This document shows positions 42,001 through 54,994 of a stretch of DNA of 64,000 nucleotides, one piece after another. This DNA comes from Macrostomum hystrix. Lineage: Eukaryota; Animalia; Platyhelminthes. The stretch's first letter is position 1, and the number at the start of each line of letters is the position of its first letter. The position numbers and the translations under genes are program-made. The stretch is from positions 2,666,001 to 2,730,000 of the forward strand of contig CATNEN010000030.1 of NCBI GenBank assembly GCA_950097015.1, given 5' to 3'. The notes under the pieces were generated by a model. That model saw only the letters and a program-made list of their open reading frames with translations, was not told the DNA's origin and searched no databases.

Positions 42001-44738
42001 GGGTTAGGTGTCGGGTCAAATCGGCAGACAGCTTGTCGGCGTCCTCTGGCATGCGCGGGTAGCGGTGCACCCGGCCAGACGTGTACAGAGCAGCGGGCAT
42101 CACCGAGGCCAGGTCAAGCTGGCTAGCACCGATGCAGAATAAATCTACAGACAGCTGGACATTGCAATATTCCAACGCCTGTCTCTTGTAGTAATCTGTG
42201 ACCGGCTGGCCGGCCGTCTGGTCAGTGTCGCTTTCCGTTGGCCGGGCGGCGAGGGCGCCAGGCTCAATTGACGGCCGAGAGGCTAGGAATAGCAGCAGGC
42301 GGCCTCCACTGGACTGGGCCATTCTGTTACAAAGATGGGATGAATTGGGAATTTAATTTATGCAGCCATAAGACAATATGTGTGGAGGAATGAGATGCTG
42401 TATGTGGGAGAATCCCTATTATAAAGCTGAAGAATGAGATGCTGTGTGTGGAAGAATCCCTATTATAAGGTTTAGGAATGTGAGGCTAGGTGTATAAGAA
42501 TCCTAATTGGGATAAGGGAACGGAAGGCTGGGTGTATAAGAATCCCAGTGGTGATAAGGGAACGGAAGACTGGGTGTATAAGAATCCCAGTGGGGATAAG
42601 GGAACGGAAGGCTGGGTGTATAAAAATCCCAGTGGGGATAAGGGAACGGGATGCTGGGTGTATAAGAATCCCAATGGGGATAAGGGAACGGGATGCTGGG
42701 TGTATAAGAATCCCAATGGGGATAAGGGAACGGGATGCTGGGTGTATAAGAATCCCGCTGTCGCACCGGTGGGCGGTGGCCAGCGCTGCTCCGAGACAGC
42801 AGCCGGGCACAGGCGGAAACTTTATCTGAGGCAGAGTTTCCAACAGTTCAACGATGGCATCGCGACATTCGGAGATCGGCACCAGCAGGCCCTCAGGTGT
42901 TGGCAGGGAAGCGTCGCCATCAAGATCTGGTATCGCCAGCAGCCGCGGCCGCGGTCCATCTAGTCGGTACAGATGCAGGATGCCGTTGAAGGTGATGACA
43001 GACAGCTGGGTGCGGGCATCGCCAGGCAGCTGGTCCAGACAGCGGAGCAGGGTGCGCGTGACGGCCGTCAGGTAGGCGGTGGCGGCCTTGGCAACGGCAG
43101 GGTCAGGTGACAAAGTCTGGGAGACATCCAACGCTATAATGTAAGTGGCCGGAGGCGGTGGCCGAACCGAATACTCCTGGGTGGCAACGAACTCCACAGT
43201 GCCGCAGCGAATCTCCGGGCGTCGGCTAGGATCGCCGAAGTGCTAAGTTGGATGATTAAAAATAGACGCCTTAACTTGGTCCACTTAATTACTCCGTTGA
43301 ACGTATAGTTACCCCAGGACTGCGCGTCATTGGTTGTAAAAGACATTTTAGGGTCATTGAACCTATAAAATTGCACCTGCTCACGAAACTAACTAATTTA
43401 TTAGGAATTTATCGCAGACCATGGTAACTCGTATTAAACATAGTTTACCAAAAAAAAGTCGTCTAGTTATAGTTTACACACTTGGTTTCTGTGCGCGTGT
43501 TTCTCGCTGGCTGCGGGTCTAATGTCACCAAGTGATGTGACAGTGTCCACAGCCCTACGCAATTACTATTATTATTATTATTCTAAGGACGTCACTTGTA
43601 CATTGATTATGTAATTATACACATTATAACACAATATGTTTGCTAGTCGCACCTGTGAGACAGGATCGTATAGAAACTCTTCGGGCAGATCGTTCTCAAG
43701 ATAGCACAGACTGCAGCGCCACCTCCTCTGGCTGGGGAAGCGCACATAAGGATTGATGTAGGCCCGGCAGGCCTGGCAGCGCACAATGACGCTGGCCTGA
43801 ATAACTGGCAGGCTGCGCAGGTCTTTAAACGGTTGCGTCACCAGGCCAAGCGGGAGGCGGCATTTGCGCAAAAGTTCCGCGCTAGACGGCACAGCGTTTA
43901 AAGTGCAGCACATCACATCCGGGTCGCAGTTGGCATCGGCGGGAAAAGGATGGCCAAGCGGCGGCGGGGTGGCCGTCTCCACAGAGTCCGGGCCGTGTGG
44001 CTGCAGTAGCAGACGTTCGCGCAGCAGATTCACAGAGTTATCGGAACTGCTCATCTGCTGGAACTGTGGAGGCTGCAGAGCAGGCTGTGGCGGACCAATC
44101 GGCGGAGGCTGCATCGGTAACGGCGGTGCCATTAGTTGGGCTGCTGCCGACACAAAGGATGGAGGCGCTGATGGGTATGAAGCCACTGGAGGCCTTGGCG
44201 GCGGGGGCGGAGGACCAACAGGAGGCCGCTGAGCAGGCGACATAGGAGGAGGCAGAGGCACGCGGGTTGTCGCCATCGGAGGCATGGTCGGCGGAGGTGG
44301 TCCAACAGTTCGCGCGCCTGGAAACACCGGTGGAAACGGCTGGCTAAAAGCAGCGGAGCCAACGATATTAGGTCTTACTGGTGGCGGCCCTAGCGGCGGC
44401 TGTGGCGTCCCAACTGGAGCAGGCCACACTGGCGATGGAGCAGAGAAATTCTGCTGCTTTGGCGCCAGAGTTGGACCTTGGGGATAAATTGTATGGGGCT
44501 GATTGCTGGGTAGTGTTGGCCTAACAGGTGTCGGATACGGAAGAGCCATATGCTCAGAAGCAAACTGAGGCCTGATAGAGGCTGTTGCTGCATGGCCCAG
44601 CTGGCCAGCAAAGCCAGGTGTGGCCACACCTACAGCAGCTGGAGCAGTTGCTATTGGAATGAAAGATCCAACTGGTTGAGCAGAGGACATTTGACTGACA
44701 CCATTCGACAGTGGTTCATGTTGCTCTGGCTGCTGCAT
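36074..44738 (-). CDS. SEC24B: COPII coat subunit SEC24, A/B type, ~970 aa (exons 44738-43653, 43242-42767, 42323-41984, 41168-40869, 38718-38455, 36523-36074)
   Basis: Pro-rich N-terminus; zinc finger RCQACRAYINP...WRCSLC; trunk RPP.PATYIIALDVS; AVLRIRCS; FQAALLYT..GDRRIRVHT; C-terminal IEDRTDSSMSYLEFL. Six exons join in frame. Start uncertain (acceptor at 44776-44777, first ATG at 44738). SEC24A vs SEC24B not resolvable. Confidence 0.93.
36590..38432. repeat. Intronic minisatellite of mixed 13/16-bp units (ggtgacaatgggctgc / ggtgattcactgt), interrupted by a SINE
   Basis: Fills the last SEC24 intron. Confidence 0.95.
37327..37689 (+). mobile_element. tRNA-SINE family B, full-length reference copy
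   Basis: Box A GGTGGCAGAGCGGTTA, box B AGTTCGATTCC, (TTA)n tail; flanked by atggtctgcggt at 37315-37326 and 37690-37701. Confidence 0.92.
38755..40755. repeat. Intronic minisatellite, 31-bp unit (tcagattcgttatgagcagtttcaggtgtag)
   Basis: About 64 copies in a SEC24 intron. Confidence 0.97.
41245..41922. repeat. Intronic minisatellite, 22-bp unit (gatcctataaagacaggatcct)
   Basis: About 30 copies in a SEC24 intron. Confidence 0.95.
42487..42756. repeat. Intronic minisatellite, 42-bp unit (ctgggtgtataagaatcccaatggggataagggaacgggatg)
   Basis: About 6.5 copies abutting the SEC24 donor at 42766. Confidence 0.92.
43490..43580 (+). mobile_element. 3' fragment of SINE family B in SEC24 intron 1
   Basis: ctcgctggctgcgggtctaatgtcaccaa...cagccct followed by (tta)n. 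Confidence 0.78.
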
Positions 44739-46405
44739 TAGTGTATTGTCTTTAATAGCATATGCTAGTGGGTTTCTGAAATTGGTTAGCAAATATTTCA
44801 TGTACTAGAGCTCATTTTCATTGACTTCTGCTTTTAATTAAGTTAATTGATATGAAAATCTTAGAGATTTATTATATTTATAATAGATGTTTAGATTATG
44901 TTAATTGGGTTTATTTAGTGACATACTTTGCAAACTATAGATGTTCATATTAAATGTCAGAAAACTTTAAATCTAAGTAAAATTTATTTATATTTTTCTG
45001 TTGATTAAAATGTATTTACATAAAAATTGGTAATAATAATTTTGCAAATGTCTCTGGGATTTTAATTTAAGAATATAGAACTGAATGAACTTTAATTAGA
45101 AGAGTTCAGTGTAAACACAAAGAAGATTCAGCAATACAAGTAAAATATTAGGTAGCTAGCTTACTTTTTCTGGTAGCCATGCTAGACATTATAAATAACT
45201 AGCTAGGCCTACCTAATATGGTCAAGGCTTTAGCAGGAGGTCAATGAGTGCACTATGTTGTTTAAACACAATGCAATATCCAGGTAAACATTTTACAAGT
45301 GATAGACCTAAAATTATAACTTGGCCTACTGCACAATCAAATAGGCCCCTAATCACTAAAATAATAATTTCTCAAAAGTTTTAGGGCAATATCAAACTGA
45401 TTATATATGTTAGTGGTTGCCACAATCAGCCTGATCAGCAGTTTTACATACATTAATGGATCTAGCAAGATTTCCCAATGGCATTAAAATTCCCAGAAAA
45501 CTTTGAACTTTTAGAATAATTGACAGGTTGTAGTGCTTCCATGTTCTTTCTACTCACACAACTATTTCAAAGCCACAATCAAGTAGCAGCTATTATTTCA
45601 CGTGGTCAAGGCTGAACTAGACAGTTTACCTCCAGCAATGACCCTCTATCAATGGTGAGTTGCTGCATGAACCCCAATTGTGAAGGAATTTACTGGTGTG
45701 GTTGCAGCAGCCAACTGTGGCATTTGGGACTGCCAGATAGTGTGTTTCATCCCTAGAAGCATTGCAGGAGATGTAACTTTATAAAAATTTATAAAATCAC
45801 AACATACATAACAAATTAGAACTCGGGACTACTTAAGTCCTTGAGGCAATAAAATTAAAGGATGGTGTTTCTTATCACGTTCCTGTTATAGTTTCTTTTC
45901 TTATGTTTTTGTTTTGTGTTACTCACAAATTAGGCCAAAAACTATAATGCTACATTTATTCCCAATTATGTGACGTCATGAGCTCTGTGATCTATATAAG
46001 TCAAAATATCGCATCGCTAGAGTATAGGTATAATGATTGCTTTGATGAAGAGGAATTCCGTAATCCGTACCTCTTCTACAAAACAACTCTAGAGTCTACA
46101 GACTACATTGCTTTGCCTCTAATCCTACAGTTTTCTAAAAAAATTGTATATACTTTTAAATTCTCTTTATACTATGCTTAAATAAACTCATATTTACATA
46201 TGCGTTCAATAACCTTAATCGGCACTGATAACTCTCATTCAAATGAAATCCTAGGCCTTCGAACACGTACGTCGTGTACGTCATCATTTAATTTTCTTTC
46301 TTAGCTTTATTCGATTTTAAATTGGCGCTAAAAAGCGTCACGATATTACAATCACATTCAAACCAAGCCATTCATTGATTATATGAGGCCTTAGTACGCT
46401 CCGAC

Positions 46406-46435
46406 CACAGAATACACAGAATACAGTATTCTGTG
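46406..46435. mobile_element. 30-bp micro-MITE with 10-bp TIRs and 8-bp TSD
   Basis: cacagaatac-acagaataca-gtattctgtg flanked by perfect gctccgac at 46398-46405 and 46436-46443. Confidence 0.65.
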
Positions 46436-47347
46436 GCTCCGACGTTCTTAAAATCACTCTTTAGCTTTATTTCTGTGTGTAGAGAGGACCATGGGTTTGT
46501 CACACACTTCTGTCTAGTGTGTACCTAGTGTGTAAAGAAACGATCACGAAAACTCGCGTCTTGCCAGTCAGTTCAAATTTAAAATTTTAATGTTAAATAT
46601 CACAAAATAAACTGTCGTTTCTGTGGATTTACTGGTATTAATGTAGAACATAGAAGTCCAAGATAATACCATTGCGTCATGTCGCAGTTAAGCAGATGGA
46701 ACTAGAACTTTTCATGAATCATGATCAACGATAAATCGACGACGATTTTGAGAACTAAAGTTATGGCTTGGCCATGACTTATGCCATGACTTAAAGTATT
46801 GCCTAATCTGTCTATGCCTTCCTAGCTATTCTTCCATGAATCCATGGCAATAAGTCGGCAATTGTTGCCTTAAAATTATTTTAGAAGATGTAGGCCTAGG
46901 AGCCTTTTTTATGGTTGGAGCATTCAATATGGACCTTTTGCCATGGACTAGTAGTACTGTAACTGTAACAATGGTCTGCAAGTTATTGGCACAGAACCAT
47001 GTCAATAAGCACTGCCTATTAAACAAAATTTATGGCTTAGATCGACCTGTAGGTAGTACAAAATAGACCTAGAAGGTTTATTTCAGGTCAGTTAGGGCCT
47101 ATTCCATTGGCATAGGCCCTAGTCATAGGCCTAGTGGTTTCCAGTCTTTTTGTCTGCCATAATCTTCTCTGCTATTATGCTAACTTACGCTACCTTTAAA
47201 AGAAAATTTGTACAAGCTTGTCTAGGCCTAGACTACCATAAGAAAAATTAAAGTAAATTTGTCTGTTATCGCTTTTATTATCACAATAATTTTTTTGTAT
47301 TGATTAGTTAAAATGTGCATACCAGGGAATTAGCTTGTGGTTTGTGG

Positions 47348-48289
47348 GGGTCCTAGTCGTTTCGTCAACTGCCGTTTTGTCAACTGACCATTTCGTCAAC
47401 TCGAGTTTTACATTGGTTGTTTCGTCAACTGGTTAATAAGATGCTCTCCAACCTTGGTCACTTCATTAACTGTCGAATGGGGATCTCTACAATCTTGGGC
47501 ACTTCGTCAACTGCCAATGACAATAGCTAATTATTCCATTAACTTCTCCGAGCTCCCGACTTCAATGCGCTTTCGTTATCTTAACAAAAATGATCTTAAC
47601 AACGATATCTTAGAAAATATATATAGATATCGTTGTATATAGAACATTCTATATAGAAAAAATGGCGCTTTGGGCCATTGGGGTGCTGGACTTAGCACAG
47701 ACTTAGAGACGATTGTACAATACTCTCCTTCTCCGAATGAACTGCATAATACGACTTAGCGTATCGAAATTCTGTTACTTCTTAATTGCTTGGGTTCCGC
47801 TCAGCCAGCGGAGGAGGGAGGAGGGGGAGTGGGGGAGGGTCCAGGGACATTTTTTGACTCGTGTGTGATATTAGCACCAGGGTGCGAGCCCGCGGGGATA
47901 GCAACCCCGGACTTCGTCAACTGCCAGTGATGGGGCCCAAACATGTTGGTCACTTCGTCAACTGCCAGTGATGGGGCCCAAACATGTTGGTCACTTCGTC
48001 AACCGCCAGTGATGGGGCCCAAACATGTTGGTCACTTTGTCAACCGCCAGTGATGGGGACCAAACATGTTGGTCACTTCGTCAACTGCCAGTGATGGGGC
48101 CCAAGCATGTTGGTCACTTCGTCAACCGCCAGTGATGGGGCCCAAACATGTTGGTCACTTCGTCAACTGCCAGTGATGGGGCCCAAACATGTTGGTCACT
48201 TCGTCAACTGCCAGTAAGGCCGCCCACGCATTTTGGTCATTTCGTCAACGAGTTGGGGAAATGGCTAGTTGATGAAGTGACCATCACCC
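47348..48289. mobile_element. Non-autonomous TIR DNA transposon, 942 bp, 8-bp TSD
   Basis: Imperfect 23-bp TIRs GGGTCCTAGTCGTTTCGTCAACT / GGGTGATGGTCACTTCATCAACT (17/23), TSD gtttgtgg at 47340-47347 and 48290-48297, dispersed ttcgtcaac motifs and an internal 41-bp array. Confidence 0.82.
47912..48215. repeat. 41-bp tandem array inside the TIR element (cttcgtcaactgccagtgatggggcccaaacatgttggtca)
   Basis: About 7 copies. Confidence 0.92.
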
Positions 48290-48448
48290 GTTTGTGGGAA
48301 GGTGTTGCCCTTTGTAAGTAGGCCCTAGAATGCCAAGAGTAGGGCCTACAAAGCCATCAAATCAAATGCTTAATTCTTAGTAGTAACTTTAATAATTTTT
48401 GTGCTAGGCCTATCTTAAATCTTACTACTTAGTATTCAAATAGGCAGA

Positions 48449-49107
48449 GCTTATTCCCATTATCCCGTGCCGATAATTTCAATTTTATCCACACGGAGCT
48501 GTGCCAATAATTTTCTGTTTATCCACATGGCAGCTTGTATGAATAGGTCTAAAACTCTTTATATATGCCATGCCGTTAATTTCAATTTTATCCATGTGGT
48601 TCTGTTCTTTGAAATGAGGCCCTTTCGGGTTTGAATGTTTTGCTGAACCCTCAAGCCAATAGATTGACAAAGTTCCCAGTGGTTTATGACAGTGTTCTAC
48701 ATTTTGACCTACATATTCATTAACCGACATTAGTGTCATCCTTTTTAATTTTTGTAATAACAACTTACTAAATCTTTTGTCATCGTTATGTGTTTTCATT
48801 CGAATGGTATTGACTTAGAAAGTAAGAAGTCAATCGAAGAAAATCATATGAGTCAACCAGCAGAATTCTAGTCAGCACCAAACTCATGACACATATTATA
48901 CATCATTTTTATTATTTTACACTATGCATTGATAGTGTACACTACACACTATACTCTGAAGCAAAATCCTTATGCTCAGAGAAGAATAGGTAGGGACTTG
49001 AAAGTAGACCTATTCATACAAGCTGCTGTGTGGATAAGCAGAAAATTATTAGCACTGATCCATGTAGATAAATTTGAAATTATTGGCACGGGACCGTGGG
49101 AATAAGC
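48449..49107. mobile_element. MITE-like element with ~100-bp imperfect TIRs
   Basis: 48449-48551 aligns to the reverse complement of 49005-49107 (gcttattccca...cagcttgtatgaataggtcta). No clear TSD. Confidence 0.72.
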
Positions 49108-50660
49108 ATTTCCATTTAAATAACCAAAAAACCTATAAAAATAAAAATGTGAATAGTTCTATAAAATTGTCAAGTCCTATCCCTACATCCCTATATCCCC
49201 TCAGAAGATATTCTGAGGCTGTTTGATTACGTTATAGGCTGTTTGAACTAGGTATAGCCTATCCTATATCGTAACCCTCTGATTTTTCATTTTTGGGCCC
49301 CTTACTTTATTAGGTTGATAGGGCCTACTTGTTACTAATTCAATTTACTTACTTTAACTTAAATCTATAAATGTTTAGCATTTTTTGTAAGTTTTAATAA
49401 AATTTCTGAGTGTTAAACAATCAAACTGGAAGGAATGATGCTATCATACAAAAAAGTTTCTAAAAACTTAGAATTGTTCCATTTTTATTCATTTGGCCTT
49501 TTATGCATGCAAATATCATGCCATTAAAAGGGAACATGGATAGTGATACAAAATAACTAAAAGTGTAATTACAAATTAGTTATGAATGATGTCTTGACTC
49601 TTGCCAATTTGCCTAGACTGCTTTGCCCCTGTAGGCCATTTAGAAGAACATGTGCATATGCTCTAATGTTTGATATTGGCACTTACTACAGTTGAGACTA
49701 GTGCCCCAATAGCTAAAACAATTGCTTTTTGATTAATAAAAGGCCAACCCCTTAGTCATAATTTATTGTCCCCAGTTACAATTTGTGGCTAAGGCTATGC
49801 TGAAAAATCTTTTTTTGTAACAATGTGACTTTATGGTTTTCTTATATTACTTGGTAAAGCTCTTCTGATTGAAGATCATGATAAAATATTTATAGGAATG
49901 CAGTGTGAAGTTATACCGTATATTCATCTATAAGTTTGTTTGTAATTATATTACAAGATTATTGCATTCATTTATTACAATTTTTTTGCATATTATACAT
50001 ATATCCCCATATGTCTCCCACAGAAAATTCTACTTTTGCTAATACTTCATTGGCAACCCCCATATGTTTAATTTGTCATACTACGTAGGTAGTAGATTTG
50101 GATATAAAATGAAAAACATCTAGAAAGAACAGGTAAATATCACTTAATGTCTAAATTATTGTGTCGTAATAATCACGCTATAAATTTAGATTCTTAGTAA
50201 AAAGATCTGATTGATGTATTTTTAGGATACCACAAAGTAGAAAGGCACTTTTTCATCAAGAAAATGTAATTGTAACAAGATAGTTTAGAAATGAATTTGT
50301 TGAAGTTTATTTAAATTAGCCAGATCCAGTCTGTATTGGTAGCTTTTTGTATTTTGTATAATAGTATTAGCATGTAAGTTTTACAATTTAGCTCAAATAT
50401 ACTCTACACACAGTAAGCAGATTGTGACATGGCATGCTTGTATGTATTGTAAATATTGGGTTAAATAGTTTATTATCAATGCTGTTTTCTAAAATCCAAT
50501 GCTAATAACCTTAAGTTCACCTGCTAGTAAAGATCTAGATAGATCTTTATAAAGGCTATTTCAAACTATACTCAAAGTTTAGCAGGTATAGTCTAGAATA
50601 TGTGATGGCAAATATTTAGCTGGCAGAATTGTGTAAATTTATCGAATTTCCTATTTGCAG

Positions 50661-51200
50661 GACTCAGACGAGCACTCTGGCTCCGGCTTCGGAGCAGCAA
50701 CGCCTGGCGCAGCGGGCGGCGGTGCGGCTGGAGGCGGCGGCAGCCTCGATGACAGCCGGCCAGTTGGGCGGTGTTCGCCAATTCGTGACCAGGACCGCTT
50801 CCTGCCCATAGCCAACATATCTAAGATTATGAAGCGCACAATACCGGAGACTGGCAAGATTACCAAGGAGGCCAAGGAGTGCGTACAGGAGTGCGTATCC
50901 GAGTTCATCTCGTTTGTCACCTCCGAGGCTTCGGACAGGTGCCAGGAGGAGAAGCGGAAGACAATGAACGGTGAGGATATTCTCACGGCGATGCAGGCTG
51001 TGGGACTGGACAGCTACATTGAGCCATTGAAGCTCTACCTGATGAAATATCGAGAGGCCAACAAGCTGGAGGCGGCCAATGAGAGAGCCGCTAATCCACA
51101 GGCTGGCGGCGCTGCCGGTTCCGCTGGCGGCGGCGACGATGGCAGTGGTCTAGGCGGTGGCGGCGACGGCACACAAACTGTTTATGTCTCATTCAACTGA
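50661..51200 (+). CDS. NFYB: Nuclear transcription factor Y subunit B (histone-fold CCAAT-binding factor); start codon not in this exon
   Basis: [17 protein letters not shown]...[61 protein letters not shown]. The exon begins at acceptor ctatttgcag|GAC (50661); TGA ends at 51200. Confidence 0.95.
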
Positions 51201-52225
51201 CTCAGTGCTGGGCTGAGCTAGCCTGATTCCAGCTGCATCTGAATGCTGACGTCCTCACTATGGTCACTGCAGTTAGCCTAATTTATAATTGTCAAATCAT
51301 TATATGTGTAGATATTGGCGTTACATACGGTAGCTTCTGTAATTTTATAATGCCCAACCACACCTTGTATTGAATGTTGCTTTACTGTGCTTATCAGAAT
51401 TGTTTTCATTGTGTTTAAATATTTGTGTTTCTGCGAATTGTAATTGAAATTTGTATTTAAGCATTAGTTTCTCTCAAATCAAAAATTGTTTCCTTACTGT
51501 TGTTCATTTTTAGCTATGAAATTAAACACACACACATCATTGTCTGTTTTCTCCAGATCAATCTCTGCATTTCTTCGCAATCCCCCATATTATTATTGGC
51601 TGCTTTAGTTTATCTATCCATCATTGTTTTTGTTAACTTACATTGCTAACAGTTTTTGGGTTGTTCGCTAGCCCATTGTTTTTTGCTGCGGATTTCTTGA
51701 TGTCGTTTCTTACTGTTCTTATGTTTGTTAGGAACTAATTATTATCAATAATAATAGTAATGTCTGAAATGATGCACACAGTTGCACTGGCTTCTGTAGC
51801 GATTTGTACAGTTCAACTGCCCAGATGTAAGCTTTATTTATTTAATGTGGTTGATAAGATTTGCGTGTTTTAAGGTTGATTTTCTGGACACTACTATGAG
51901 TAAGCAATCTCTAATATTTGGGTCCTTAACAGCAGAAAGAAAACGCTGTTTTTCCGCCTGGGTCAAGACAACGGGGTTGTTTCAAATACAAATTTAACCT
52001 GGCAAGTTTACCTACCTGAGTCGAAGACCCTGGCAACAAGGACAAATAACATTGCTTTGTATAAACCTCTTTGGTGAATCCATATCGGTTTAAAATCGTA
52101 TAAATTAACAATATTGTTTAAAATAGATAGTTTTTATATTGTAGCAAATATAACGGTCCTATTGTAATATAATTCGGTGACAAATCGGGGTCTGTAATAG
52201 GAAATTGTGCTCCATTCCAGACAGA

Positions 52226-54994
52226 ATGCCGGACTACTGCCAGTGCAATGCTTCGTCCACACCACTGGCCTCCGTCTATGCTGCCGGCTTAAAGGTGGCC
52301 CGTGTAAATCAGTCGCATGTACGCGAGCTGTTCTCTCTAGCTGGCCGAGTTGTTGGCGTTCGCATCTGTATGCCTAAACGCGATTCTAATCAGACGTAAG
52401 GTTGCTCAGCATTTGTGATTTCTCATACCAGTTTGTGCTGTGTTTCTTGGACCAGTTTATGCTGTGTTTCTGGGACCAGTTTATGCTGTGTTTCTGGGAC
52501 CAGTTTATGCTGTGTTTCTGGGACCAGTTTATGCTGTGTTTCTGGGACCAGTTTATGCTGTGTTTCTAGGACCAGTTTATGCTGTGTTTCTGGGACCAGT
52601 TTATGCTGTGTTTCTGGGACCAGTTTATGCTGTGTTTCTGGGACCAGTTTATGCTGTGTTTCTGGGACCAGTTTGTGCTGTGTTTCTGGGACCAGTTTAT
52701 GCTGTGTTTCTGGGACCAGTTTATGCTGTGTTTCTGGGACCAGTTTATGCTGTGTTTCTGGGACCAGTTTATGCTGTGTTTCTGGGACCAGTTCATGCTG
52801 TGTTTTTGAGACCAGTTTATGCTGTGTTTCTGGGACCAGTTTATGCTGTGTTTCTGGGACCAGTTTGTGCTGTGTTTCTGGGACCAGTTTATGCTGTGTT
52901 TCTGGGACCAGTTTATGCTGTGTTTCTGGGACCAGTTTGTGCTGTGTTTCTGGGACCAGTTTATGCTGTGTTTCTGGGACCAGTTTATGCTGTGTTTCTG
53001 GGACCAGTTTATGCTGTGTTTCTGGGACCAGTTTATGCTGTGTTTCTGGGACCAGTTCATGCTGTGTTTTTGAGACCAGTTTATGCTGTGTTTCTGGGAC
53101 CAGTTTATGCTGTGTTTCTGGGACCAGTTTGTGCTGTGTTTCTGGGACCAGTTTATGCTGTGTTTCTGGGACCAGTTTATGCTGTGTTTCTGGGACCAGT
53201 TTATGCTGTGTTTCTGGGAACGGTTTATGCTGTGTTTCTGAGAATGTTTCTGGGAACAGTTTATGCTGTGTTTCTGGGACCAGTTTATGCTGTGTTTCTG
53301 GGACCAGTTTATGCTGTGTTTCTGGGAACAGTTTATGCTGTGTTTCTGAGAATGTTTCTGGGATCAGTTTATGCTGTGTTTCTCGGACCAGTTTATGCTG
53401 TGTTTCTAAGAATGTTTATGGGACCAGTTTGCTAAAAAAGTTTCTGATGCTCAATGGAAGCAATTTCTGCTGTTCTTGGAAGCAGTTTCTGCTGTTCTTG
53501 GAAGCAGTTTCTGCTGTTCTTGGAAGCAGTTTCTGCTGTTCTGGGAAGCAGTTTCTGCTGTTCTGGGAAGCAGTTTCTGAGAAAGAAGAGTTAGAAATAC
53601 TTTTGGCTGCTGAGTTAGACGCGTTGAAACCTCCTGGTGGTACAATAGCAAGTTAGATAAGTTTATATAAAAAATATCAAAGCCATGCATCGCCTGGTCC
53701 TCGCCTGCACAATTCAGACTAGGCTACGCCTTCATCGACTTCGCCTGTCCTCACGGCGCCTACGCCGCCGTTCTGCGCTTCAACGGGGTTGAGCTTCGCG
53801 GCAGCAGCCTTCAAGTCCGGCTGGCTGAGACCGGCCTGCGAACCTGTCTAGTGCCGACGCGCTGGTCGCTGACTAGCGGCGATAAAGTCAAACGTGACCA
53901 ATCGAGAGAGTCTAGCATCTACATGGTGAATGCGCGCGCTATTAGCCGATCTCACCTGTACACTGAGATTCTCAAATTAGTGAAGCCCTTGGCTCCTATT
54001 AAAGAGATTAAAATTAATTGGAATCCGTGCCGTAATCTGTGGAACGCGTTTGTTTATTCGCCTGGTGAGTAGTTGATCTAGATTCATTCAGTTTCCTTTT
54101 ACAAGAACACAAATCGTCTGCTTTGATAAGTCCGAAGCTTTAACCACAGAGTTTTTAAGTTCCTTTATTTCATAAAACCCATTTATTTGGCTTGTTAAAC
54201 CAACTGGTTTGGGAGCTATCGTGAAGTAGGCAGTGGGTATTTGAAATAACCCAGCGGTTTTTCTACTGTTAAAAAGAAGGCTTTGTGCGTAAGTTTGGTC
54301 TCGCTGCAGATACGAACCCAGTACCTTAGGTGTGCTTTTATCCTCCGGCCTCTCAGACCCCAGCTTTGCCGAGCGCGCCGTAGCCCGGCTGAAAGGTATC
54401 CGCCTGCTGGACTCCGAAGTCGATGTCGGCGCCTTCAAGCCGTGCAAGTCGCGCCAGATCGCTCTGACGCCCAGCCAGCCGGCGAAGTTGCCAGGCGGCC
54501 AGCTGCTGTGCCTGCCAACTGAGGACGAGGAGCTTCATCGGCGCCGTCTGGCCGCCGAGTCTGGCATCGGCACAGGCAGAGATAATCCGCTACTGATGAA
54601 CAGTCGGGCTAGTCAGCGACTTAAGCGAGTCGCGCATCAGTTAGCCGACCTGCTGAAGTTGCCGCCCATCCAGACCTACCGCCTGCTGCTGCTGCCAGAC
54701 ACTGAGCCCCCGCCGCCGCCGCCTCCCTTGACAAATTCGAATAAGTCGCCGAAGACGCTCCTGAGATCAAAGAGTGCGGATCAGAAGCCCTGTTCAGGCG
54801 CCGTGTCATCGACCTCTCTTTCGCGGCTGGCCGGTTCAACTGACGACGCCATCGAGCAGTTGGAGCTCAATTATCGTCTGTTTTGCGCTGAGGAGCACTT
54901 TGCCCGCTCATCGGACCTGCTGGCCGCGCACTGCCGCGAAGATCAGCTTGTCGCCGGTGTTGCCGCTACCGAACCGTCAGAGAAGCTGATTTGA
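52226..54994 (+). CDS. RNA-binding protein with two RRMs and a low-complexity tail, ~384 aa (exons 52226-52395, 53718-54064, 54357-54994)
   Basis: RNP2-like SVYAAGL, ELFSLAGRVVGVRI, RNP1 LGYAFIDF, NGVELRG; a second degenerate RRM (SIYMVN...AERAVARLKG). GT-AG phases consistent. Confidence 0.8.
52432..53580. repeat. Intronic minisatellites: 24-bp unit (gtttatgctgtgtttctgggacca) and 21-bp unit (gaagcagtttctgctgttctg)
   Basis: About 41 copies at 52432-53432 and about 6 copies at 53455-53580 in RRM intron 1. Confidence 0.95.

What the first reader, a model, noticed from the sequence alone, without database searches (positions are those of the whole stretch)
50640..50720. NF-YB has no start codon of its own; the spliced-leader AUG would complete it exactly
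Seen: the NF-YB exon opens at a clean acceptor (ctatttgcag|GAC TCA GAC GAG CAC) in phase 0. The first in-frame ATG lies inside the histone fold (KIMKR), so starting there would truncate the conserved core, and I found no convincing upstream coding exon. Established: flatworm spliced leaders end in AUG, which can act as the initiator Met in schistosomes. Inference: SL trans-splicing gives [10 protein letters not shown]..., which resembles natural NF-YB N-termini. A core transcription factor would then depend on trans-splicing for translation.
Basis: partly seen in the sequence, partly recalled or inferred. Interest (0 to 1): 0.78.

Follow-up and report, generated by a model that had tools for sequence, protein, structure and literature searches.

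The report
NF-YB start codon from spliced leader
In this Macrostomum flatworm the gene for transcription factor NF-YB has no start codon of its own, and transcript contigs show the trans-spliced leader, which ends in AUG, joined exactly in frame to its first codon; this is a well-supported new example of a mechanism known in flatworms since 2006.

Summary
A single exon (50661-51200, +) opens after the acceptor ctatttgcag| and encodes a 179-residue NF-YB (Pfam PF00808, E 1.5e-26; solved NF-YB cores, E 1e-42).

- **No start in the genomic DNA:** an in-frame TAA lies 27 nt upstream, with no ATG between it and the exon. The first ATG in the exon (50749) is out of frame and gives 20 aa. The first in-frame ATG (50829, Met57) lies 16 residues inside the crystallised histone-fold core.
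- **The junction is seen in RNA:** in all four public runs laid (two studies), one contig covers the exon and carries, just before 50660/50661, the last 23-27 nt of the published 35-nt Macrostomum lignano spliced leader. The mRNA reads ...UUGCAUG|GAC UCA GAC. No contig lies on the 1.4 kb upstream.
- **The layout is conserved:** the M. lignano orthologue and a diverged paralogue have the same arrangement (cag|GAC TC., no ATG), and both GenBank models are marked "partial". Homology to M. lignano begins 6 nt before the exon.
- **The N-terminus is coding:** codons 1-39 show dN/dS of about 0.09.

Trans-splicing is shown. Use of the SL AUG is a strong inference; no translation data exist. The kind is known (Cheng et al. 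2006). First readers of this scan left 22 similar, unchecked notes elsewhere in this genome. This is a new member of a known kind.

The parts
50634..50636 (+). First in-frame stop codon (TAA) upstream of the exon; no ATG lies between it and the acceptor
50646..50660 (+). Pyrimidine-rich tract and AG trans-splice acceptor (atttcctatttgcag). In the mature mRNA, position 50660 coincides with the G of the SL AUG
   Evidence: sequence; SL-bearing contigs start to fit at 50660 in 4 runs; DNA homology to M. lignano L001 begins at 50655
50661..51200 (+). Single coding exon of NF-YB: 179 sense codons (DSDEHSGSG...VSFN) plus TGA. The Met codon is supplied in trans by the spliced leader
50749..50811 (+). 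First genomic ATG in the mRNA. It is out of frame and opens a 20-aa ORF ([20 protein letters not shown]), so it would trap ribosomes that skip the SL AUG
   Evidence: an equivalent out-of-frame ATG (26 aa) is present in M. lignano L001
50781..51056 (+). Histone-fold core (residues 41-132), aligned end to end with crystallised NF-YB cores (1n1j, 4awl, 6qmp, 9r4d)
   Evidence: E about 1e-42; PF00808; dN/dS 0.005/1.1 against M. lignano
50829..50831 (+). First in-frame genomic ATG (Met57, in KIMKR). Starting here would delete 16 residues of the conserved core, including most of helix alpha-1
51201..51706 (+). 3' untranslated region as far as transcript contigs reach. The main contigs end at 51391-51458; separate contigs cover 51467-51706. 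The poly(A) site was not determined
   Evidence: table 8

Best explanation
This is the NF-YB (CBF-A/HAP3) gene of a Macrostomum flatworm, in a single coding exon. Its pre-mRNA is SL trans-spliced at the AG ending at 50660. The 35-nt spliced leader ends in AUG, and that AUG lands directly in front of GAC (50661), in frame. It is the first AUG of the mature mRNA and the only one that gives a complete protein: [10 protein letters not shown]..., 180 residues.

Shown: the gene identity, the lack of a genomic start codon, the SL-exon junction in RNA-derived contigs, the frame, conservation of the layout in a second species and in a paralogue, and purifying selection on the codons right after the junction.

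Inferred: that ribosomes start at the SL AUG, and that a transcript which is not trans-spliced cannot make functional NF-YB.
For: 1. Junction. In runs X1-X4 (two studies) one contig per run fits 50660 onwards with 0-3 mismatches over 308-799 nt. Each has 22-26 loose letters in front, (TACT)GCGAAGACTCAATTTATTGCAT, which match the 3' part of the published M. lignano SL (PMC8629364). Depth is zero over 49217-50657 in all four runs, so the contigs derive from RNA, not DNA.
2. Frame. SL-AUG followed by GAC TCA GAC gives MDSDEH... The SL tail seen has no other AUG, and the published SL as read has none either.
3. No alternative start. An in-frame TAA lies 27 nt upstream. The next AUG (50749) is out of frame. 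The next in-frame AUG is Met57, 16 residues inside the region aligned to solved NF-YB cores.
4. Conservation. The M. lignano orthologue L001 reads tttcag|GAC TCA GAC GAG CAC, and the paralogue L002 reads cttcag|GAC TCG AGC. Neither has an in-frame ATG in the exon before the KIMKR Met, and both GenBank proteins are flagged "partial".
5. Homology between the window and L001 starts at 50655; nothing upstream is conserved by blastn or tblastx.
6. Codons 1-39 have dN 0.114 and dS 1.28, so they are translated in this frame.
7. In the alignment, orthologues from other animals have their Met one column before the position of D1.
8. Precedent. The flatworm SL 3'-terminal AUG serves as initiator Met. 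[quoted passage not shown] 2006, as summarised in PMC9851317).
Against: There is no ribosome-profiling, N-terminal proteomic or reporter evidence for this gene or species. The runs were available only as assembled contigs, which drop rare variants, so a minor cis-spliced or unspliced isoform cannot be excluded. The record does not state that the runs are RNA; that is deduced from the coverage pattern. In the M. lignano orthologue, an in-frame ATG lies 24 nt upstream of the acceptor in the outron; it could in principle serve unspliced transcripts there, but it is not conserved in the window.
Confidence: 0.85

Rival explanations
1. A cis-spliced upstream exon (or an alternative promoter with its own first exon) between about 45760 and 50600 supplies the ATG, and the SL form is only one isoform.
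For: Sharing of acceptor sites between cis- and trans-splicing is reported in parasitic flatworms (PMC12582326).
Against: All four runs give the SL form as the assembled 5' end, and none has a contig on 49217-50657. Contigs on 48431-49216 are short, mostly 90-95% alike, and belong to a repeated element. No conserved sequence, by blastn or tblastx, exists upstream of 50655 against either M. lignano locus. The M. lignano gene models also start at the acceptor and are marked partial.
Confidence: 0.06
2. The mRNA is trans-spliced, but translation starts downstream (Met57 or a non-AUG codon), so the first 56 codons are 5' UTR and the SL AUG is bypassed or opens only a regulatory upstream reading.
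For: The Kozak -3 position of the SL AUG is weak (U). Authors note that not all SL AUGs that are in frame need be used (PMC3510090).
Against: Codons 1-56 show dN 0.073 against dS 0.92, and codons 1-39 show 0.114 against 1.28; this is the signature of a translated frame. Starting at Met57 removes 16 residues of the conserved core, [16 protein letters not shown]. An out-of-frame AUG at 50749 precedes Met57 and would capture scanning ribosomes.
Confidence: 0.05
3. The locus is a non-functional processed copy (intronless and without an ATG) of an NF-YB gene located elsewhere.
For: It is a single exon with no start codon. The M. lignano paralogue L002 has an intron in the fold, whereas this copy has none.
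Against: It is expressed in four runs. The ORF is intact, with core dN/dS of 0.005/1.1. It lies in conserved synteny (Sec24 on the minus strand, NF-YB, then an RRM gene) with M. lignano scaffold NIVC01001371.1.
Confidence: 0.02

Closest known systems
[quoted passage not shown] The ORFs it creates are called "slORFs" in PMC9851317
   Same: The SL ends in AUG and is joined in frame to an exon that lacks its own start codon, and the SL AUG is required for a full-length protein. The mechanism is the same.
   Different: This is a different lineage (a free-living macrostomorph, not a parasite) and a gene not named in any of the papers I could read. Use of the AUG is inferred here, whereas Cheng et al. 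tested it experimentally; I know that paper only through secondary citations, because it is not in the held library.
Macrostomum lignano SL trans-splicing (35-nt SL; about 30% of genes; PMC8629364) and the M. cliftonense / M. hystrix annotation (PMC10468722)
   Same: The SL letters seen match the published SL. PMC10468722 states that the SL probably includes the final ATG as a translation start codon, and left it on the reads for that reason.
   Different: Those papers do not analyse which genes depend on the SL AUG. NF-YB is not mentioned there. The M. lignano GenBank models of both NF-YB paralogues are simply left "partial".
NF-YB / CBF-A / HAP3 histone-fold subunit of the CCAAT-binding factor (human NF-YB structures 1n1j and 4awl)
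   Same: Residues 41-132 align end to end with the crystallised core at E about 1e-42, and the alignment shows about 70% identity across that stretch.
   Different: The start codon is not encoded in the gene. Gly/Ala-rich tails flank the core.

Membership tests
NF-YB (CBF/NF-Y histone-fold subunit B) | CBFD_NFYB_HMF histone-fold domain above the curated threshold | tested here: met
   PF00808, 92.9 bits against a cut-off of 21.4, E 1.5e-26, residues 47-111
NF-YB (CBF/NF-Y histone-fold subunit B) | Full-length match to the conserved core of experimentally solved NF-YB, not to NC2/Dr1, POLE3 or core histones | tested here: met
   The best PDB matches are all NF-YB/HapC chains (9r4d_B, 6qmp_B, 4awl_B, 1n1j_A), E about 1e-42, query 41-132 against chain 2-96. 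The top database hits are named NF-YB.
NF-YB (CBF/NF-Y histone-fold subunit B) | Forms a dimer with NF-YC and a trimer with NF-YA on CCAAT | not testable with these tools
   Needs biochemistry; inferred from homology only.
SL-AUG-initiated mRNA (flatworm SL 3'-terminal AUG as initiator Met) | The mature RNA carries the SL joined at an AG acceptor | tested here: met
   Loose 5' letters in 4 runs from 2 studies, at 50660/50661; they match the published SL.
SL-AUG-initiated mRNA (flatworm SL 3'-terminal AUG as initiator Met) | The SL ends in AUG, and this AUG is in frame with the main ORF | tested here: met
   ...TTGCAT + g50660 + GAC TCA translates as M-D-S-D-E-H....
SL-AUG-initiated mRNA (flatworm SL 3'-terminal AUG as initiator Met) | No genomic AUG can give the full-length conserved protein | tested here: met
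   In-frame TAA 27 nt upstream; first exon AUG out of frame; first in-frame AUG is Met57, inside the core.
SL-AUG-initiated mRNA (flatworm SL 3'-terminal AUG as initiator Met) | The region between the SL AUG and the next AUG is translated | tested here: met
   Indirect: dN/dS of 0.114/1.28 for codons 1-39 and 0.073/0.92 for codons 1-56, against the M. lignano orthologue.
SL-AUG-initiated mRNA (flatworm SL 3'-terminal AUG as initiator Met) | Initiation at the SL AUG observed directly (ribosome footprints, N-terminal peptide or reporter) | not testable with these tools

The most novel reading that the evidence does not exclude
The genomic start codon of NF-YB was lost before the duplication that gave the two Macrostomum paralogues, so both copies have long been obligately dependent on the SL AUG. 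Trans-splicing would then act as an on/off gate for NF-Y: unspliced transcripts meet only an out-of-frame 20-26-aa ORF. The perfectly conserved first 24 nt of the exon (against dS of about 1 elsewhere) would be a nucleotide-level element that favours acceptor choice or initiation at the poorly contexted SL AUG.
Probability: 0.25. Interest if true: 0.55.

Novelty: new member of a known kind. Interest (0 to 1): 0.38.

Why it matters
**Annotation.** Gene finders and GenBank pipelines that demand a genomic ATG leave such genes "partial", as happened to both M. lignano NF-YB models, or truncate them at an internal Met. Here that would remove part of the histone fold. First readers of this scan left 22 similar, unchecked notes in the same genome, so the effect on the proteome annotation may be wide.

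**Biology.** NF-YB is required for spermatogonial stem-cell maintenance in the planarian Schmidtea mediterranea (PMC4909293). In M. lignano, 85% of neoblast-specific genes are reported to be SL trans-spliced (PMC8629364). A core transcription factor whose translation depends on trans-splicing is a clean, testable case for the debated function of SL trans-splicing of monocistronic genes.

**Limits.** It does not change the known picture of the mechanism.

Tried and rejected
- **SL RNA gene in the window:** a search with the 23-nt SL tail at up to 3 mismatches found none. The SL comes from elsewhere in the genome, as expected.
- **Upstream cis exon:** blastn (word size 9) and tblastx of 44801-50660 against the regions upstream of both M. 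lignano NF-YB genes found nothing.
- **Cheng et al. 2006 (PubMed 16230357):** not held in the library. Its content is cited only through PMC9851317, PMC12582326, PMC5832876 and PMC3510090.
- **Supplementary tables of PMC8629364:** these might list Mlig011607.g1 and Mlig001526.g10 as trans-spliced, but they are not held.
- **Wudarski et al. 2017 (PMC5730564):** says nothing on use of the SL AUG.
- **Region not laid with reads:** This does not weaken the main result, because an exon there would have appeared as non-SL loose letters at 50660.
- **Species of the window:** run and organism names are coded, so the species cannot be named. It is a Macrostomum whose NF-YB coding sequence is about 81% identical at the nucleotide level and 90% at the protein level to the M. 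lignano orthologue.
- **Pseudogene or retrocopy reading:** considered and rejected (see rival explanations).

Full report
**Observation.** The window reads ...atcgaatttcctatttgcag|GAC TCA GAC GAG CAC TCT GGC..., with the exon's first base at 50661. From there a single open frame of 179 codons runs to TGA at 51198-51200.

- The product is NF-YB. Pfam PF00808 (CBFD_NFYB_HMF) scores 92.9 bits, E 1.5e-26, over residues 47-111.
- Residues 41-132 align end to end with the crystallised cores of human NF-YB (1n1j, 4awl, 6qmp, 9r4d) at E about 1e-42.
- Upstream in the same frame, a TAA lies at 50634-50636 and no ATG lies between it and the exon.
- Within the exon the first ATG (50749) is out of frame and opens a 20-codon ORF.
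- The first in-frame ATG is 50829 (Met57 in ...ISKIMKR...), 16 residues inside the stretch that aligns to the solved core.

**Organism and synteny.** The best database relatives are two Macrostomum lignano proteins, BOX15_Mlig011607g1 (P0001, 90-92% identical) and BOX15_Mlig001526g10 (P0002, 75%). GenBank marks both as "partial".

P0001 lies on scaffold NIVC01001371.1, between a Sec23/24-family gene on the opposite strand and an RRM gene on the same strand. The window has the same order:
- A Sec24 zinc-finger exon lies at 43578-44801 on the minus strand (PF04810).
- NF-YB follows at 50661-51200.
- Homology to the RRM gene lies at 53722-54934.

Nucleotide identity in the NF-YB exon is about 81%. 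The window therefore comes from a different Macrostomum species, or from a deeply diverged copy. It cannot be named because run and organism labels are coded.

**The decisive test: RNA.** I laid the contigs of four public runs (X1 from one study, X2-X4 from another) on 48300-52200.

- In every run one contig fits from 50660 onwards. The ranges are X1 50660-50967, X2 to 51458, X3 to 51416 and X4 to 51391, with 0, 3, 0 and 0 mismatches.
- In every run that contig carries loose letters in front of 50660: GCGAAGACTCAATTTATTGCAT in X2-X4 and TACTGCGAAGACTCAATTTATTGCAT in X1.
- Together with g50660 these letters equal the last 23-27 nt of the published 35-nt M. lignano spliced leader, CGGTCTCTTACTGCGAAGACTCAATTTATTGCATG (PMC8629364).
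- The fit extends to 50660 only because the G of the acceptor AG is the same letter as the G of the leader's AUG. With a canonical AG acceptor, the junction is SL...AUG|GAC(50661).
- None of the runs has any contig on 49217-50657. The material therefore behaves as RNA, although the run records do not say so.
- The contigs on 48431-49216 are short, mostly 90-95% alike, and belong to a multi-copy inverted-repeat element rather than to this gene.

**Frame and start codons.** SL-AUG followed by GAC TCA GAC gives M-D-S-D-E-H-S-G....

- The part of the leader seen contains no other AUG, and the published 35-mer as read has none either. The leader's AUG is therefore the first AUG of the mRNA, 32 nt from the cap.
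- Its context is UUGCAUGG, weak at -3 and good at +4.
- A ribosome that skipped it would first meet the out-of-frame AUG at 50749.

**Conservation.**
- In the M. lignano orthologue the sequence is ...caaacacaaatttcag|GAC TCA GAC GAG CAC TCT GGC TCC GGG... (L001, exon from 5986).
- In the paralogue it is ...gcaataacttcag|GAC TCG AGC CTG GAC... (L002, exon from 3481).
- In both, the exon has no in-frame ATG before the KIMKR methionine.
- The paralogue is only 75% identical in protein and has acquired or kept an intron inside the fold. The layout is therefore older than the duplication.
- DNA similarity between the window and L001 begins at 50655, six bases before the exon. Nothing upstream is conserved, either by blastn or by tblastx. 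This is what is expected if no coding exon lies upstream.
- A Nei-Gojobori count against the orthologue gives dN 0.114 / dS 1.28 for codons 1-39 and dN 0.073 / dS 0.92 for codons 1-56. The histone-fold core gives 0.005 / 1.11. The stretch right after the junction is thus under protein-level constraint in this frame, and that needs a start codon at or before the junction.
- In an alignment with NF-YB proteins of other animals, their initiator Met sits one column before D1 of the window's protein (MEGTDNGDE, MESHDGSDD, MENGDN...).

**Mechanism.**
- Shown: the gene is NF-YB, it has no genomic start codon, its mRNA is SL trans-spliced at 50660/50661, the leader's terminal AUG is in frame, and the arrangement is conserved.
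- Inferred: ribosomes start at the leader's AUG and make a 180-residue NF-YB, and transcripts that escape trans-splicing cannot make a functional protein.
- I put the whole statement at about 0.85. The remaining doubt is the lack of translation data, and the fact that assembled contigs hide minor isoforms.

**Rivals.**
- A cis-spliced upstream exon (0.06). It is disfavoured by the four SL-bearing contigs, the empty upstream coverage and the absence of any conserved upstream sequence.
- Initiation downstream, with the first 56 codons as untranslated leader (0.05). It is contradicted by the dN/dS values and by the damage to the fold.
- A dead retrocopy (0.02). It is contradicted by expression, constraint and synteny.

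**Comparison with what is known.** The mechanism is established.
- All reported flatworm leaders end in AUG (PMC12582326).
- Cheng et al. 2006 showed that the AUG can serve as initiator Met. According to PMC9851317, it is in frame in 28% of trans-spliced S. mansoni transcripts and more than 40 cDNAs need it.
- In Echinococcus granulosus, 143 of 187 SL-bearing clusters were predicted full length using the SL ATG (PMC3510090).
- None of the papers I could read names NF-YB, and the M. lignano trans-splicing study does not treat AUG donation.
- First readers of this scan left 22 similar, unchecked notes elsewhere in the same genome, for example on CHMP6, NDUFA5, SFMBT, PPP2R3C, DPH7, NSA2, HYI and NUDT12. 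I did not test these.

**Verdict.** It is a new member of a known kind and of moderate interest. Its main value is as a clean, conserved, experimentally tractable example, and as a warning for annotation.

Noticed in passing
window 50661-50684 vs L001 5986-6009: The first 8 codons after the trans-splice site are 100% identical at the nucleotide level between the window and the M. lignano orthologue, although dS is about 1 in the rest of the gene (about 5.3 synonymous sites; rough chance about 0.01, post hoc). The paralogue shares only GACTC. This may be a nucleotide-level constraint near the acceptor or start. The exon start GACTCA also occurs inside the leader (GAAGACTCAAT), which is probably coincidence.
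   Followed up: partly
L001 5962-5964: In the M. lignano orthologue an ATG lies in frame 24 nt upstream of the acceptor, inside the outron (ATG CTA TAC AAA CAC AAA TTT CAG|GAC). It is absent from the window (which has TAA in that stretch) and from the paralogue, so it is probably chance, but it could serve unspliced transcripts in M. lignano.
   Followed up: partly
P0001 / P0002 (M. lignano GCA_002269645.1, NIVC01001371.1 and NIVC01000777.1): Both GenBank NF-YB models of M. lignano are flagged "partial" and start 15 nt and 3 nt after the predicted trans-splice acceptor. This looks like an annotation artefact of the SL-donated start codon.
   Followed up: partly
window 48440-49120: An inverted-repeat (MITE-like) element. 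Many short transcript contigs at 90-95% identity pile up here, with summed depth up to about 190 per bin and about 300 at single positions. One contig gives an "opposite strands" joint at 48484/49037. It is a multi-copy family, transcribed somewhere in the genome.
   Followed up: no
window 47911-48249: A tandem array of a 41-bp unit, 8.3 copies, 93% matches (ACTTCGTCAACTGCCAGTGATGGGGCCCAAACATGTTGGTC). Related TTCGTCAACTG motifs are scattered over 47358-48280 in the Sec24/NF-YB intergenic region.
   Followed up: no
window 52427-53579: A large minisatellite: a 24-bp unit in about 34 copies (96% matches), with derived 36-108-bp higher-order units, then a 22-bp unit in 6.4 copies. It lies between NF-YB and the part of the downstream RRM gene that is homologous to M. 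lignano (53722 onwards). It creates long spurious ORFs in several frames.
   Followed up: no
window 52205-52399: A candidate exon after an acceptor (ttccag|ACAGA ATG CCG...), with its own ATG at 52226 and a GTAAG donor near 52395, about 1 kb downstream of the NF-YB stop on the same strand. Pfam finds nothing in this 57-aa piece. It may be the first exon of the downstream RRM gene and, if trans-spliced, an operon partner of NF-YB.
   Followed up: partly
window 43578-45760 (minus strand): A Sec24-family gene runs divergently from NF-YB. It has a Pro/Gln-rich N-terminal exon with the Sec23/24 zinc finger (PF04810, 1.6e-14). A probable further 5' exon near 45600-45760 was read by eye only. The synteny is shared with M. 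lignano.
   Followed up: partly
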